Position numbers and translations under genes: made by a program
Part shown: in pieces, positions 11,374 through 15,900 of the stretch
Numbering within the stretch: the first letter of the stretch is position 1
Layout: each line of letters starts with the position of its first letter
Source: Pocillopora damicornis
Taxonomy: Eukaryota
NCBI RefSeq assembly: GCF_003704095.1
Contig: NW_020844152.1
Location: forward strand, 310,001 to 374,000
DNA length: 64,000 bases
Direction: 5' to 3'
Notes under the pieces: model-generated
What the model was told of the DNA's origin: nothing
Databases searched by the model: none
Seen by the model: only the letters and a program-made list of their open reading frames with translations

Positions 11374-11523
11374 CTGGGCCCAGTTGTATAAAGGAGGATA
11401 ACGCTGTCCAACAGATAAATCGCTATCCGGTGGATAAGTGATAGCAAAACGTATAGCGTTATCGACCGGATAGAGTTTTATCTAGTGGATAGCGTTATCC
11501 AACCTTTGAACAACCGGGGCCTG
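11374..11523. mobile_element. Palindromic MITE
   Basis: Imperfect TIRs ctgggcccagttgtataaagg / cctttgaacaaccggggcctg, with internal ggata/tatcc repeats. Lies between the divergent GTPase and H1-like genes. Confidence 0.75.
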
Positions 11524-12149
11524 ATGTAAATTTCCGACAGCAATAAACTCTATTGTTTGAGTAATAATAACGTTAATGACGAGATTATGAAAATCAAGTA
11601 GAAAGCATGTTAAGTGTGATGAACTTCGCGGAAAACTGGAATTCACCATACTCATATCCGTCACACAGCAAATTACAAGTCATCTACATTCTTTCTTCTC
11701 AATGCCTTTCCCGATGCTAAAAATTAATAAAAAATTGTTCGTTAAGTCAGCCCTCTTGAACTTGCTTGACTTTCCATCTAGGGAAGTTTATTTTTAACAT
11801 TTAACGTCGATTAAGAATTGAAAATAACCACATTGATAGACAGGGTAGTGTACTGAAAATAAAAGTACTTGTACCAAAGTTAGTAATGTTGCTGTAGGAC
11901 TACTAATCGATGTGAAAGTACTGTAATCAAGTAACATGATTTTAGCAACTCATTAGATACTTGATCGATGAATAAAGACAGAATATAGAAAACAATTGAA
12001 GAGTGAGTGTCCCCACTAAATGAACAAACAATAACAATAATAATCCCAATTTGTCATAAATGAAACTGGCTTTCACTTCAGACATAATTTCGATGTTCAC
12101 CGTTATCTGAATTAGACAGTTATCCTAATCATCGACTAATTATCTAATG

Positions 12150-12272
12150 ATTTGCATAATTAATCACAATCAGTGCTCCTTATGCAAAATAAAACTATCA
12201 TAACCTGACGTCATTGAGATAAACGTCCTACGTCATATGACCAGCGCGCCATTCGAATTTGTAATGCACGTG
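12150..12272 (+). promoter_or_regulatory. Putative proximal promoter of the H1-like gene
   Basis: Octamer ATTTGCAT 12150-12157, CRE TGACGTCA 12206-12213 and E-box CACGTG 12267-12272, all within 135 bp of the ATG. Confidence 0.45.
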
Positions 12273-12282
12273 GTGTTCAGAC

Positions 12283-12972
12283 ATGTCGCCCACAACAAGA
12301 AAACACCAGAAAAATTATATCCCACACGTTCTCGAAGCCGTGAAAATGCTGCAAGGAAAGGATCATGGAGCCTCCACCAAGAATATTTTGAAATATCTAG
12401 AGGATAAGTTAAATGATGAAATGAATGGTGTGAAAATTTTGCCTTCACCAGCTGATGGAGTGGTGAAATCCGCCCTCAGGGAGGCTTTGAGTTCTGGTCT
12501 ACTTGTTCATTACAGTGGGGTTGGTTTAAACGGATCATTCGTATTACCACTGCACTCCAAAGGATTAAAAACAAAAGATATGGAAGACATGAAACAACAG
12601 GACAAGCAGAAATCTGTCATCACAAAAGAAGCAAAGTTGCGAACGATTTCTTCGCTGGCAAATAAACTTCAAGAAAGTGCTCGCCTTCAAAAGAAACCGG
12701 CCAAGGCGGACTCTGCCTCTAAACGTCGGCGGATAACCAAGCTTCAGTTGCCAGTTGGCGATCTTGAGTCAGACAAAGAAGATCAGTTTGACACTGGAGA
12801 GAATACAACAGCGTTAAAAACAATCTTGAAACTATCGCGTAAAAGAAAATTTACTGGTTCTAAAATCAAACGAAAGAAAGTTTCAAGAAGAGTCAAATTT
12901 CGTTCGCCACCCCGGGTAATTTTCATAACACCTTGCATTAAGAGACGATCCAAGCGCAAGAAGGCGGAGTGA
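12283..12972 (+). CDS. Linker histone H1/H5-like (H15 winged-helix) protein with basic tail; single exon, 229 aa
   Basis: YIPHVLEAVKML..GASTKNILKYL..VKSALREALSSGLLVHYSGVGLNGSFVL matches the H15 globular signature (GSS..I.KY; G.GA.GSF.L). K/R-rich C-terminus. Confidence 0.85.
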   Translation: MSPTTRKHQKNYIPHVLEAVKMLQGKDHGASTKNILKYLEDKLNDEMNGVKILPSPADGVVKSALREALSSGLLVHYSGVGLNGSFVLPLHSKGLKTKDMEDMKQQDKQKSVITKEAKLRTISSLANKLQESARLQKKPAKADSASKRRRITKLQLPVGDLESDKEDQFDTGENTTALKTILKLSRKRKFTGSKIKRKKVSRRVKFRSPPRVIFITPCIKRRSKRKKAE

Positions 12973-15900
12973 CATTAGCGGTAATCGTGGATATAAAGCT
13001 GGAGGGCAGATAAAGGTTTTAAGGCAAACTGTAACCGAAGTACAAAGTAACAAAGAGTAAACTTTAATACCAGGGCTGATATAGAAATGGCAGTTAAAAA
13101 CAAAGTAGCTCAAAGTATGTTCTGCTGTTTTGACAAATTATGTTCCATGTTGTGTACCAATGGCTACTTTCCTTTTCTTTGCATGAAGAGTAATTAATCG
13201 TAACAGTAGACCGAGTCAGCCCTTTTGATTCATGCTACATCATCTATGAGGGAAAGCTTACCTTTGATGGATACTTCATCCCCTCCCCTCTCCTCCTATC
13301 AAATCCATTCCTAAATTTACAAGTCTGTTCTCATTTGTGTCATGTTGGGTTTGTTCATTTAAAAAGTTCACCGTTTGAAAAGAAAGCTCAGCTTTTATTG
13401 GGATGATGAGAACTGAAAAATAAATTTTTCTAGTGGGGCCTTGAAGTCCACAAGTCTTAAACTTTACTCCAGATGTTCACCTTTTTCAAGTGATATTTTT
13501 ACAACTTTAGCCACTTGTCACAGGATTTGAACCATGACTTTGCAAGAGAGACTTCTGAAGATCAGATGTTTGTTTTTATTCCCATTATCACTGGATTTAA
13601 GCTTGTCAATGAGCTCTCTGACATGTGACATTTCAAAGCTTTGCCTACAGAACCACTCCTAAATTTAATAAATTATTCTTAATGTAACTTTTTATCCTAT
13701 ATGATACCAGTTTCCTAAAGTCCCTGAAATGTTAATAAAGAACCTCATTTTTGAATATGGCAATTTGTTGTACCACCTGATGCTGTGGTATTAACCATCA
13801 GATCAAATGTAGATGAGAGGCACAGAACTAATCAACAAATACATGACACAAGATATCAATTAAATGAACTGCAACAGTAATACTTCTATTTTCAGTTTTA
13901 TAGCATTTCCCTTCAGATAAAACTTGGTACAGGGTACAATTTGGCAAATTGACAAATGGTTTTACCATTGTTTGTATGGAGCTAAATAATAAATTTCTTT
14001 CAGGCCACTAGACATTCTACCATCAGTAATGTGAGCCTTGTCCTCCCTCCTTACTTAGAAAGTTAGAATGTTGATTGGTCTCAAAATTAATTAGAGTAAA
14101 TCTATAAATCTCAGAGGGATAAATATGTTAGTTTTGCCATGTTGAGAATCATAAAGTGATGACCAAGTCCCTTTTGATTGGCTTGATTTTCACTGCAATT
14201 GATTTTATTCCAAGTCAAAGAATAACACTTAGATAGTTATGCCTTAAACTTCATTTCATGGTTGCTCCCACAAAGGCATAAGGCTATCAGTAGTTTTGTC
14301 TCACTCTTATACTGTATTAGGTAAACCCTGATGTAAACTGAGAGCCTCTGAGCTCACACACTGCCTGAAAGTGATACTTGCATAAAGTGAAGCTGGATAA
14401 GAAAGTGAAGCCAGATAAGAAAGACGCAAAATAACTAGGGAAGACAAGAAGGAAATGTTTACTCCTCAGCCTTTCAATTAATTATATTTCACAACTATCT
14501 ATTCTTCAAGTATTTGTTCAATCAGGATATGGCAGGTTTCTGATCATTTTTCTAATTGTCCTTAAGTTTAATCTTATGGGCTCTTGTAATACCATGACAG
14601 AGCACATAAAAAACAATAAGTGCCCCTTTACAAACAATGTAATGGCTGTCTTTCTATCACATGAGGATATCATTTCTTTATTTTGGCTGAAAGGGGTTGT
14701 GAAGTTAAATAAGCCCAAGATAAATTTTCCGAAACAATTTACAAAATGACCATTTGAAAAAATAAAGTGTGTTTAAGGAAGCCAGTTACCAAAGTTAACT
14801 TATTCTATAAGAAAACGATTGAATCAATTTATGAAATGATGCATATTGAAAACAAATTTATGAAGATCTTTATTTCAATCAATCTTCTGTTGCACACATT
14901 TAGTAGAAAACATCAAGTGTTAACAATTGTACTGTAAAAATTACAGAGACAGAAAGATTCCAAAAGTGTGTTTCCTTATTAAAGATCTTATTAAAGATGA
15001 AACAAAGATTATAGAAACTAATAAAGGCACCACACCATAGAAGAACTGAAGATGTGGTCAAGGAAAGACGTACTTTCTGCTTATCCACACACCCTGAAAA
15101 ATTAAATTGTATGCTAACATTGTACCTCTAATTTCCCCTCTTGCCGCTCCTATCAATATGAAATATCAAAAATGATATGATAACTTAACTCTGTTACTCT
15201 TAGCCTGAGTGAGCAAGATTTATTCTGCACATAACTATCTGAAAAAGTCATCTTTTATTTAATGTTCAATTAAATTATTTAAGATGAATGAGCAGGGAAT
15301 CTTCATTCTTTATTGTAATTTCCATTTATATAATACACCTCTACAATTTAATTTGTTTAAGTATGTATAAAAAATTGAATATCAGAATATACAGTAAGGC
15401 AAGGAGACCATAACAAGAACATTTGCACAATGTCTCCTCAAAGAAATTCATTCCCACTCAAAATTTGTGTAACCAATGAATGTAATGTTCTGATAATGTC
15501 AGGACCAAGTTGTGTTTTGTCTAATACAAACCTCCATATAATGAAGCTTAGCCATATTAATAATAATCATGATAGCATGATTAAAGAACAATGATAACTG
15601 TAAAATTCTACCCAACCCCAACCTCTAAGCGAGGGCAGAATCAATGCACCTGACTTAATATAATAGGTTAACCATGATCATGGATCAACAATGTCAATTA
15701 CTAAATGACTTGTTTAGTAAACTATTCGTTGGCAATTTAGTCCAAGGTTTTAAACAAGCACTTAAAGAAGTGTTCATTTCTTTCCTACATTTGCTAGATC
15801 ATCTACTTACAAGAGAGGCAGAGAATGCTGCCCCTCATCACAAGAGAAAATTATCCATTCAGATTCTTTCATGAATTCATAGAAAGTAAAGAATCAGCTA

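What the first reader, a model, noticed from the sequence alone, without database searches (positions are those of the whole stretch)
12820..12972. Linker-histone-like protein with a complete PP1-docking cassette in its tail
Seen: after the H15 winged-helix domain, the tail reads ALK-TILK(180-183)-LSRKRKFTGSKIKRKKVS-RRVKF(202-206)-RSPPR-VI(212-213)-FITPCIK-RR(221-222). Established: PP1 regulatory subunits bind through a [GS]IL[KR] (SILK) motif N-terminal to RVxF, a phi-phi pair 5-8 residues after RVxF, and an Arg 8-9 residues later. Canonical H1 tails are low-complexity K/A/P and lack such motifs. The spacing here fits all four elements (TILK is a variant), and phosphorylatable S/T-P sites (SP 208, TP 216) flank the RVxF. 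Inference: a nucleosome-binding PP1-targeting subunit built on a linker-histone fold. I do not recall such a protein being described.
Basis: partly seen in the sequence, partly recalled or inferred. Interest (0 to 1): 0.8.

Follow-up and report, generated by a model that had tools for sequence, protein, structure and literature searches.

The report
Coral H1-like protein with PP1-docking tail
A small, expressed coral gene encodes a linker-histone-like domain followed by a disordered tail, and across corals and sea anemones the tail's only unchanging residues spell the two best-known docking motifs for protein phosphatase 1, so it is probably an undescribed PP1 adaptor, though binding is untested.

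Summary
ORF 12283-12972 (+), 229 aa, has a Pfam H15 domain at aa 12-88. Its tail carries TILK 180-183, RVKF 203-206, SP 208, VI 212-213, TP 216 and RR 221-222.

In 49 relatives, down to 22% identity, the only invariant tail columns are L182, K183, V204 and F206. I181 and P217 are conserved at 90% or more. The linker between the motifs varies in length and sequence. Named members come from Pocillopora, Orbicella, Porites, Montipora and Acropora, plus a mis-annotated Nematostella ORF.

Controls support specificity:
- None of 83 other H15 representatives carries the motif pair.
- None of the 11 canonical H1 ORFs read in this genome carries either motif.
- Tail shuffles reproduce the full arrangement 5 times in 100,000.

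The gene is single-copy and intronless, appears in polyA RNA assemblies, and lacks the histone 3' stem-loop.

Caveats:
- PP1 binding is inferred, not shown.
- The Arg element is uninformative in a K/R-rich end.
- T at the first SILK position is not experimentally validated.
- The H15 domain has net charge 0, against +8 to +11 in canonical H1, so nucleosome binding is doubtful.

A conserved promoter module suggests late-cell-cycle expression. No paper linking H15 to PP1 was found, and the scan had not noted this before.

Verdict: a new variant of a known kind (RVxF/SILK-type PP1 interactor); interest about 0.6.

The parts
12206..12213 (+). TGACGTCA palindrome (CRE-like), 77 nt before the ATG
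   Evidence: TGACGT(CA) found 73-98 nt before the ATG in 4 of 8 family loci (window, L025, L024, L017). Function inferred.
12243..12257 (+). GC-rich block followed by TTCGAA (12252-12257), a CDE/CHR-like element at the 5' end of the RNA contigs
   Evidence: TTCGAA or TTTGAA lies 8-18 nt upstream of the CACGTG in 6 of 8 loci; TTCGAA occurs in 2.8% of background 100-nt windows. RNA contig X5 starts at 12255. PMC4176359 lists TTTGAA and TTCGAA among the commonest functional CHRs, located at the TSS.
12267..12272 (+). CACGTG E-box, 16 nt before the ATG
   Evidence: CACGTG lies 16-35 nt before the ATG in 8 of 8 family loci; background is 2.4% of 100-nt windows.
12283..12972 (+). Coding sequence, 229 aa plus stop, no intron
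   Evidence: ORF; unspliced polyA-library contigs cover 12255/12279 to 13594-14138, and 11604-12207 upstream has no depth in 3 of 4 runs; single copy in the genome.
12316..12546 (+). Divergent H15 (linker histone) winged-helix domain, aa 12-88, net charge 0
   Evidence: PF00538, 31.4 bits. AF2 helices at 13-23, 32-46, 57-70; generic winged-helix matches at Z 5-6, including H1.8 and H5; charge 0 against +8 to +11 in canonical H1.
12610..12660 (+). Conserved middle island, aa 110-126 (KEAKLRxISSLA type), function unknown
   Evidence: entropy 0.76 against 1.7-1.9 in the flanks; also present in clade P0082/P0084.
12814..12831 (+). LKTILK, aa 178-183: SILK-type PP1 docking motif (T variant)
   Evidence: entropy 0.14. 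L182 and K183 invariant, I181 at 90% or more in 19 sequences of 22-56% identity. The first residue varies S/T/A/G/P.
12832..12885 (+). Basic, unconserved linker, aa 184-201
   Evidence: entropy 1.43; the gap between the two motifs ranges from about 10 to 25 residues across the family.
12886..12900 (+). RRVKF, aa 202-206: RVxF-type PP1 docking motif
   Evidence: V204 and F206 invariant; 47 of 49 sequences fit [RK]-x(0,1)-[VI]-{P}-[FW], and 43 of 49 fit two stricter consensus forms.
12904..12909 (+). S208-P209, a proline-directed site (SPPR fits the full CDK consensus) between RVxF and the hydrophobic stretch
   Evidence: an S/T-P lies within 5 aa after the F in 44 of 49 sequences; [ST]P.[KR] in 29 of 49.
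12916..12927 (+). VIFI, aa 212-215: PhiPhi-type hydrophobic stretch 5 residues after RVxF; with R211 it also reads as a second RVxF-like RVIF
   Evidence: V/I at 212, aromatic or L at 214, I/F at 215 are conserved; second RVxF-like motif.
12928..12933 (+). T216-P217, second conserved proline-directed site
   Evidence: P217 invariant in A1 and A2; at 90% or more in A3; a second S/T-P in 46 of 49.
12937..12963 (+). Basic C-terminal end, aa 219-227 (IKRRSKRKK); holds the candidate Arg element and is a likely NLS or DNA-binding patch
   Evidence: I219, K220, R221, R222, S223 conserved at 90% or more within stony corals. This conservation does not hold in the deeper clades.
12973..13766 (+). 3' UTR with AATAAA at 13734-13739; no histone stem-loop
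   Evidence: contigs end at 13755 and 13766. AATAAA positions; no Rfam match at E<=1, whereas canonical H1 loci L002 and L003 carry RF00032.

Best explanation
The gene encodes a member of a family found in named stony corals and a sea anemone, plus unlabelled assemblies. Each member has a divergent H15 winged-helix domain followed by an intrinsically disordered basic tail. The tail's conserved core is a composite docking site for the protein phosphatase 1 catalytic subunit: a SILK-type motif ([S/T/A/G]-I-L-K), a variable linker, an RVxF motif ([R/K]-V-x-F), then a hydrophobic PhiPhi-type strand bracketed by two proline-directed Ser/Thr sites. The proposed mechanism has four steps. (1) The I/L and V/F side chains occupy the SILK and RVxF pockets on PP1, as they do in Inhibitor-2 and the engineered SILK-linker-RVxF-PhiPhi peptide (by recall, KNL1 too). 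(2) The H15 domain, the basic tail, or both place the holoenzyme on chromatin or another nuclear target. (3) Phosphorylation of the S/T-P sites inside the docking segment by CDK-type kinases switches PP1 binding off, as shown for RepoMan. (4) PP1 then acts on nearby chromatin substrates, on the protein itself, or on both. Shown here: gene structure, presence in polyA RNA assemblies, H15 membership by HMM, predicted disorder of the tail, and the pattern of invariance. Inferred: PP1 binding, phospho-regulation, chromatin targeting, and cell-cycle timing.
For: The motifs are present at the stated places. In 34 stony-coral sequences the entropy is 0.14 for LKTILK and 0.35 for RRVKF, against 1.43 in the linker between them and 1.66 in aa 126-176. 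In 19 sequences down to 22% identity the only invariant tail columns are L182, K183, V204 and F206, with I181 and P217 at 90% or more. 47 of 49 sequences fit the general RVxF consensus and 43 of 49 fit stricter forms. Three deep members carry canonical SILK. The linker varies in length and sequence, as expected for two separately docked motifs; PMC11536154 shows a SILK-linker-RVxF-PhiPhi peptide binding PP1 at 4 nM with a dynamic linker. AF2 predicts the tail as coil. Controls: 0 of the 11 canonical H1 ORFs read from this genome and 0 of 83 other H15 representatives carry the pair; the shuffle frequency is 5e-5. The family is monophyletic against canonical H1, support 100/100. It includes an uninterrupted Nematostella ORF with PILK, RRVHF, SP and VFWIS. 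Conserved S/T-P sites sit inside the docking segment; by analogy, Cdk1 phosphorylation of sites within RepoMan's PP1-interaction motif blocks PP1 binding (PMC5005033). PP1-type catalytic genes are present in the genome.
Against: There are no binding data, and no complex model could be made here. RVxF-like strings are common: 17% of shuffled tails contain one. T, A or P at the first SILK position lies outside the experimentally confirmed G/S-I/V-L-K definition (PMC9813921). Two anemone-like members have H or Y-H before V-x-F and fail even the general consensus. The Arg element is uninformative in a K/R-rich end, and in human PNUTS its mutation does not affect association (PMC10731240). The H15 domain is charge-neutral in this protein, so chromatin targeting through it is uncertain. 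The tail alone has no detectable similarity to solved PP1-regulator chains.
Confidence: 0.6

Rival explanations
1. The protein is a specialised replacement or germline-type linker-histone variant. Its conserved tail islands serve chromatin functions unrelated to PP1, such as a short beta-strand or hydrophobic contact with DNA, the nucleosome or another partner, or nuclear or nucleolar targeting. The resemblance to PP1 motifs is coincidental.
For: It carries an H15 domain, a strongly basic tail of +28, a polyadenylated transcript without the stem-loop, as in replacement H1 variants, and very uneven depth between samples: 1086 against 8-44. Male-enriched, polyadenylated H1 variants are known in cnidarians, for example Hydractinia H1.2 (PMC5011920). 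RVxF-like strings occur by chance in 17% of shuffles.
Against: The invariant residues are exactly the hydrophobic and Lys positions of two PP1 motifs, in the right order, while the basic residues expected to matter for DNA binding vary freely. No other H15 protein examined has the pair. The tail composition (K 16%, A 6%, P 4%) is unlike H1 tails.
Confidence: 0.2
2. The protein binds PP1 through these motifs but is chiefly a PP1 substrate or inhibitor rather than a targeting subunit. Docked PP1 would remove CDK phosphates from the protein's own S/T-P sites, or the protein would sequester PP1, and no nucleosome-directed activity would result.
For: Two conserved S/T-P sites lie directly next to the docking motifs. 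The H15 domain is neutral, which weakens the case for nucleosome targeting. SILK plus RVxF is also the motif set of Inhibitor-2 (PMC11536154).
Against: No helix or segment that could reach the PP1 active site is predicted C-terminal to the motifs; only about 15 residues remain. The H15 domain is retained under constraint across the family, which argues for a targeting or partner-binding role.
Confidence: 0.15
3. The ORF is a chance or annotation artefact, or a decaying histone pseudogene.
For: The H15 score is weak: 31-33 bits against 84-110 for canonical H1 in the same genome.
Against: Full-length orthologs exist in many genera with conserved length and motifs. A discrete unspliced RNA contig appears in polyA libraries from three studies. 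The promoter module is conserved.
Confidence: 0.02

Closest known systems
RepoMan (CDCA2) and Ki-67, chromatin-associated mitotic-exit PP1 adaptors
   Same: Both use an RVxF followed about 5-7 residues later by a PhiPhi pair within a disordered segment. Both have proline-directed Ser/Thr sites inside the docking segment; in RepoMan, Cdk1 phosphorylation of such sites blocks PP1 binding (PMC5005033). A chromatin context is proposed for both. The promoter carries a CHR-like element typical of late-cell-cycle genes.
   Different: The KiR-SLiM (FDxxLP(P/A)N(T/S)PL...) is absent. A SILK motif is present here, whereas none is described in the Ki-67/RepoMan PP1-interaction domain (PMC5005033). There is no sequence homology. 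This protein is 229 aa with an H15 domain, against 1023 and 3256 aa.
KNL1 N-terminus, Inhibitor-2, CSRNP and RIF1: PP1 interactors that combine SILK and RVxF
   Same: The SILK-type motif lies N-terminal to the RVxF, separated by a flexible, poorly conserved linker. That a SILK-linker-RVxF-PhiPhi string is sufficient for nanomolar PP1 binding was shown with an engineered peptide (PMC11536154).
   Different: The first SILK residue is T, A or P in most members here, whereas the confirmed definition is G/S (PMC9813921). The scaffold domain is different, and there is no homology outside the motifs. KNL1 and RIF1 details are recalled from memory and were not tested here.
PNUTS, spinophilin and NIPP1: the RVxF-PhiPhi-(F)-Arg string
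   Same: An RVxF is followed by a hydrophobic pair at the expected spacing, and a basic residue lies 8-9 positions later.
   Different: The Arg match is not informative here because the end is rich in K and R. No helical extension is predicted.
Linker histones H1/H5 and replacement H1 variants (PF00538)
   Same: The protein has an H15 winged-helix domain with the GxGxxGSF wing signature, a basic tail, and an intronless gene.
   Different: The globular domain has net charge 0, against +8 to +11. The tail is not K/A/P low-complexity. The mRNA is polyadenylated and has no 3' stem-loop. The tail's conserved residues are hydrophobic docking positions rather than S/TPKK repeats.

Membership tests
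Linker histone H1/H5 family (Pfam PF00538) | H15 winged-helix domain scoring above the family's gathering threshold | tested here: met
   31.4 bits against a cut-off of 22.4, aa 12-88; 32.6 bits in the six-frame genome scan. The AF2 model has three helices plus a wing. Structural matches at Z 5-6 are generic winged helix, with H1.8, H5, H1x and Hho1p among tied rows, so the fold search does not discriminate on its own.
Linker histone H1/H5 family (functional linker histone) | Strongly basic globular domain with the DNA-contact lysines and arginines of the wing and helix 3 | tested here: not met
   The domain has net charge 0, against +8 to +11 in the 11 canonical H1 ORFs read from the same genome. 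The HTKGVGASGSFKVAK-type wing reads HYSGVGLNGSFVLPL here. Family members range from -4 to +9, so deeper clades are more basic.
Linker histone H1/H5 family (functional linker histone) | Long K/A/P-rich low-complexity C-terminal tail | tested here: not met
   K 16%, A 6%, P 4%, against K 24-33%, A 7-23%, P 4-12% in canonical H1s of this genome.
PP1-interacting proteins (RIPPOs) of the RVxF type | RVxF motif ([K/R]-x(0,1)-[V/I/L]-{P}-[F/W]) in a disordered region | tested here: met
   RRVKF at 202-206. The tail is predicted as coil. Consensus as given in PMC10731240.
PP1-interacting proteins (RIPPOs) of the RVxF type | The motif is conserved in orthologs beyond its surroundings | tested here: met
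   V204 and F206 are invariant in 19 sequences down to 22% identity. 47 of 49 sequences fit the consensus.
PP1-interacting proteins with a SILK motif | G/S-I/V-L-K N-terminal to the RVxF | tested here: inconclusive
   I-L-K is invariant or nearly so, and the order is correct. The first residue is T here and S/T/A/G/P across the family; only P0082, P0084 and P0085 (SILK) fit the confirmed definition, and P0087 reads GLLK (PMC9813921).
PP1-interacting proteins with the RVxF-PhiPhi-Arg string | A hydrophobic pair 5-8 residues after RVxF and an Arg 8-9 residues further on | tested here: inconclusive
   V212-I213 lie 5 residues after F206 and are conserved as a hydrophobic stretch. R222 fits the Arg spacing, but the last 11 residues are mostly K/R, so any register would match.
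PP1-interacting proteins (any type) | Physical, motif-dependent binding to the PP1 catalytic subunit | not testable with these tools
   No multimer prediction or binding assay was available. The PP1c gene of this genome is multi-exon and its exons were not joined.
Ki-67/RepoMan PP1-binding domain | KiR-SLiM FDxxLP(P/A)N(T/S)PL(R/K)(R/K)Gx(T/S)P after the PhiPhi pair | tested here: not met
   The sequence after VIFI is TPCIKRRSKRKKAE. Motif as defined in PMC5005033.
Replication-dependent histone genes | 3' UTR stem-loop (Rfam RF00032) instead of polyadenylation | tested here: not met
   No Rfam match at E<=1 in 11500-14800. Canonical H1 loci L002 and L003 carry RF00032. Contigs from polyA libraries cover the gene.

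The most novel reading that the evidence does not exclude
A linker-histone fold was recruited in the ancestor of corals and sea anemones as the targeting module of a CDK-gated PP1 holoenzyme. The protein would be transcribed from a DREAM/CHR-type late-cell-cycle promoter and would act on chromatin at mitotic exit or in gametogenesis. That would make it a functional analogue of RepoMan/Ki-67 built on an H15 scaffold, and the first PP1 regulatory subunit derived from histone H1.
Probability: 0.3. Interest if true: 0.8.

Novelty: new variant of a known kind. Interest (0 to 1): 0.6.

Why it matters
PP1 gains its specificity from roughly 200 regulatory proteins, most of them defined in vertebrates and yeast. 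I am not aware of any that is built on a linker-histone domain, and full-text searches found no paper joining the two. If this family binds PP1, it would show a new way of bringing the phosphatase to chromatin. It would also provide a compact natural SILK-linker-RVxF-PhiPhi cassette with built-in proline-directed switches. Cnidarian cell-cycle and germline biology would gain a tractable 190-250 aa, single-exon gene that can be tested in Nematostella. The invariance pattern is also a clean example of short linear motifs being the only constrained residues in a disordered tail over a long evolutionary span. Finally, the result corrects a public Nematostella gene model that splices the tail away.

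Tried and rejected
- **Tail against PDB sequences:** only a chance match to ribosomal protein L38 (E 0.71); no PP1-regulator chain.
- **ESM Atlas:** the tail search gave no usable hit. The search with P0084 returned only generic H1 clusters with scores under 0.9, so it gave no taxon or function lead.
- **Foldseek against PDB:** nothing at E<=0.001, because the model is mostly disordered. VIA-wide gave only generic winged-helix matches.
- **Naming the taxa of the deep unlabelled clades (P0082/84, P0085/91, P0087 group):** cluster look-ups gave no names. Sample identifiers were not found in papers. Flanking genes were uninformative. Only the link from the P0087 group to Nematostella succeeded.
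- **Further promoter loci:** P0079 had no record and P0017 returned no DNA.
- **Literature:** 'linker histone'+RVxF+SILK+PP1 and 'H15 domain'+'protein phosphatase 1' returned no papers. 'histone H1'+RVxF+PP1-binding returned six papers, none with a title or abstract about an H15-PP1 protein.
- **Rejected readings:** KiR-SLiM membership (motif absent); a MyPhoNE-type motif, cyclin RxL, D-box or KEN explanations for the conserved islands (by eye, no fit); pseudogene or artefact.
- **Not done:** the PP1 catalytic gene of this genome is multi-exon. Its exons were not joined, so no complex or fusion model was attempted.

Full report
**What is there.** The finding lies at the 3' end of a single open reading frame, window 12283-12972 on the + strand, 229 aa. 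Base 12820 is the first base of the T180 codon. Residues 12-88 match Pfam PF00538 (linker histone H1/H5) at 31.4 bits, above the 22.4 cut-off. The best PDB sequence match is the H5 globular domain, and it is weak (E 0.2). An AlphaFold2 model built on 34 sequences gives three helices (13-23, 32-46, 57-70) and a wing, then coil to the end. Its overall confidence is low because most of the chain is disordered. Structure searches return generic winged-helix matches at Z 5-6, with H1.8, H5, H1x and Hho1p among tied rows. H15 membership therefore rests on the HMM and on the GxGxxGSF wing signature.

**The gene is real and is not a canonical histone gene.**
- It is single-copy in the assembly, which has 234 Mb in 4393 contigs.
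- Contigs from polyA RNA libraries of three studies cover it as one unspliced piece: 12279-13594, 12306-14138, 12255-13342 and 12289-13766. The 600 bases upstream have no depth in three of four runs. Contigs cannot show strand or expression level.
- AATAAA at 13734 precedes two contig ends at 13755 and 13766.
- No histone 3' stem-loop is found downstream at E<=1. Two canonical H1 loci of the same genome do carry RF00032.
- The nearest named protein, 98% identical, is annotated 'histone H1-delta-like / uncharacterized / H15 domain-containing' in Pocillopora verrucosa and P. meandrina. The window therefore comes from a Pocillopora genome. From memory, the assembly size and contig count fit P. 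damicornis.

- A word-indexed search found 33 full-length relatives of 42-98% identity. Named members are from Pocillopora, Orbicella and Porites, and later Montipora and Acropora. From memory, these genera span both major stony-coral lineages.
- In that alignment, after removing near-duplicates, column entropy is 0.14 for LKTILK and 0.35 for RRVKF. It is 1.43 for the 17 residues between them and 1.66 for aa 126-176.
- A profile search of 1.84 billion representatives added deeper members of about 30% identity. Three of them carry canonical SILK with KVRF or SVKF. Others carry GLLK, AILK or TILK with RVKF, HVKF or RVTF.
- One clade is tied to sea anemones. Its H15 domain is 51% identical to a 141-aa Nematostella 'predicted protein'. 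In the Nematostella scaffold the reading frame runs on without interruption past the annotated splice site and ends with PILK, RRVHF, SP and VFWIS. The deposited model is therefore mis-spliced and the cassette is present.
- In a 19-sequence alignment spanning all clades (22-56% identity to the window protein), the only invariant columns outside the H15 domain are L182, K183, V204 and F206. I181 and P217 are at 90% or more (one search is similar).
- Over all 49 sequences, 47 fit the general RVxF consensus and 43 fit two stricter forms recalled from the literature. The gap between the two motifs ranges from about 10 to 25 residues and is not conserved. An S/T-P follows the Phe within five residues in 44 sequences, and a second one follows in 46.
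- The family forms a clade apart from this genome's canonical H1s (support 100/100). It has four deep branches whose order is unresolved.

**Controls.**
- The 11 canonical H1 ORFs read from loci of the same genome have neither motif.
- Of 93 representatives returned by the profile search, only the 10 that belong to this family carry a SILK-like motif followed by an RVxF within 7-40 residues. None of the other 83 does.
- Shuffling the tail gives the ordered pair in 0.36% of trials and all four elements with the stated spacing in 0.005%.

**Reading.**
- The invariant residues are the positions that insert into PP1 pockets in solved complexes. In RVxF these are the second and fourth residues (PMC10731240). 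In SILK it is the Ile, which occupies a deep hydrophobic pocket (PMC9813921).
- An engineered peptide of the same architecture (SILK, flexible linker, RVxF, PhiPhi-x-F, Arg) binds PP1 at 4 nM. Its linker is dynamic in the crystal (PMC11536154). This matches the unconstrained linker seen here.
- The most economical explanation is therefore that the tail is a PP1 docking site.
- Two conserved proline-directed sites sit inside the docking segment. SPPR at 208 fits the full CDK consensus. In RepoMan, Cdk1 phosphorylation of sites within the PP1-interaction motif blocks PP1 binding until anaphase (PMC5005033). I infer a similar switch here. That is inference only.

- The H15 domain of this protein has net charge 0, against +8 to +11 for the canonical H1 globular domains of the same genome. 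The basic wing residues are replaced. Across the family the domain ranges from -4 to +9. Nucleosome binding through the globular domain is therefore doubtful for the coral protein. The +28 tail may supply DNA affinity instead.
- The Arg element cannot be evaluated in an end that is mostly K/R. Its mutation in human PNUTS does not affect association.
- T, A or P at the first SILK position is outside the experimentally confirmed definition.
- R211-V-I-F214 is itself RVxF-like and overlaps the PhiPhi pair.
- The two S/T-P sites bracket the hydrophobic stretch, not the RVxF.
- No binding evidence exists. The PP1 catalytic gene of this genome is multi-exon (PP1-type N-terminal domain hits).

**Unexpected extra: the promoter.**
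- Upstream of the conserved start codon, all eight family loci examined have CACGTG 16-35 nt before the ATG. The background is 2.4% of 100-nt windows.
- Six of the eight have TTCGAA or TTTGAA 8-18 nt further upstream. All six TTCGAA/TTTGAA loci but Nematostella have a GC-rich block in front of it.
- Four of the eight have TGACGTCA at -73 to -98.
- In the window these elements lie at 12267, 12252, 12243 and 12206. One RNA contig begins at 12255.
- TTTGAA and TTCGAA at the transcription start are the commonest functional CHR elements of DREAM/MuvB-controlled late-cell-cycle genes in mammals. A GC-rich CDE can sit four nucleotides upstream (PMC4176359).
- This suggests, but does not show, G2/M-type expression. 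That would fit a mitotic-exit role. The very uneven contig depth between samples (1086 against 8-44) would equally fit germline or proliferative bursts.

**Comparison with known systems.**
- It works like the SILK-plus-RVxF interactors (Inhibitor-2; by recall also KNL1, CSRNP and RIF1) and like the chromatin adaptors RepoMan and Ki-67.
- It is not a member of the Ki-67/RepoMan family because the KiR-SLiM is absent.
- It is an H15-domain protein by HMM, but it fails two functional hallmarks of linker histones: a basic globular domain and a K/A/P tail.
- Full-text searches found no paper joining an H15 domain or linker histone with an RVxF/SILK PP1-docking role. The cnidarian histone survey read here describes only ordinary H1 variants.
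- The scan's own notes hold nothing on it.

**Verdict.** The PP1-docking inference is well supported by evolutionary evidence but untested biochemically (confidence about 0.6). The nucleosome-binding part is uncertain. Novelty: a new variant of a known kind, namely a PP1-interacting protein on an H15 scaffold. It is found in named stony corals and a sea anemone, and in further unlabelled assemblies.

Noticed in passing
window 12206-12272; also L001, L014, L015, L017, L020, L024, L025 upstream of their start codons: A promoter module is conserved across the family. CACGTG lies 16-35 nt before the ATG in 8 of 8 loci. TTCGAA or TTTGAA (CHR-like, preceded by a GC-rich block in all six but Nematostella) lies upstream of it in 6 of 8. 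TGACGTCA lies at -73 to -98 in 4 of 8. This resembles CDE/CHR late-cell-cycle promoters (PMC4176359).
   Followed up: partly
L020:3001-3579 (Nematostella vectensis GCA_000209225.1, DS469543.1): The deposited 141-aa gene model (P0094) introduces a splice that removes the tail. The genomic ORF is uninterrupted (193 aa) and ends with PILK, RRVHF, SP and VFWIS.
   Followed up: yes
window 12610-12660 (aa 110-126): A third conserved island, of the KEAKLRxISSLA type, is shared by stony corals and clade P0082/P0084 but absent from the anemone-like clade. It contains an R-x-x-S basophilic-kinase-like site. Its function is unknown.
   Followed up: no
window 12913-12924 (aa 211-214): RVIF is a second RVxF-like string that overlaps the PhiPhi pair. 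It is present as [RK]-V/I-x-[FW] in many members but not all.
   Followed up: partly
window 12889-12891: One RNA contig (run X5, 95-99% alike, probably another Pocillopora lineage) reads GTC instead of AGA. This changes R203 to V, giving RVVKF, which still fits the RVxF consensus.
   Followed up: no
window 12279-13594: Contig word-depth for this gene is 1086 in run X1 but 8-44 in X2, X5 and X6, while the neighbouring gene at 14860+ stays at 44-100. Expression appears strongly sample-dependent. Contig depth is a poor measure, so this is only a hint.
   Followed up: no
window 11414-11526: This is a short stretch where many RNA contigs from all four runs align only partly and continue into unrelated sequence (loose ends). 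It is probably a dispersed repeat between the upstream gene and this one.
   Followed up: no
G000:C2193:585484-585648, C3240:203144-203302, C290:104670-104828: Three further weak H15 matches (28-40 bits, profile positions 7-61) occur in the same genome. They are neither canonical H1 nor this family.
   Followed up: no
G000:C787:53904-54023: A PP1-type catalytic-subunit N-terminal domain (PF16891, 68 bits) lies on the same contig, about 256 kb from the gene. No linkage significance is claimed.
   Followed up: no
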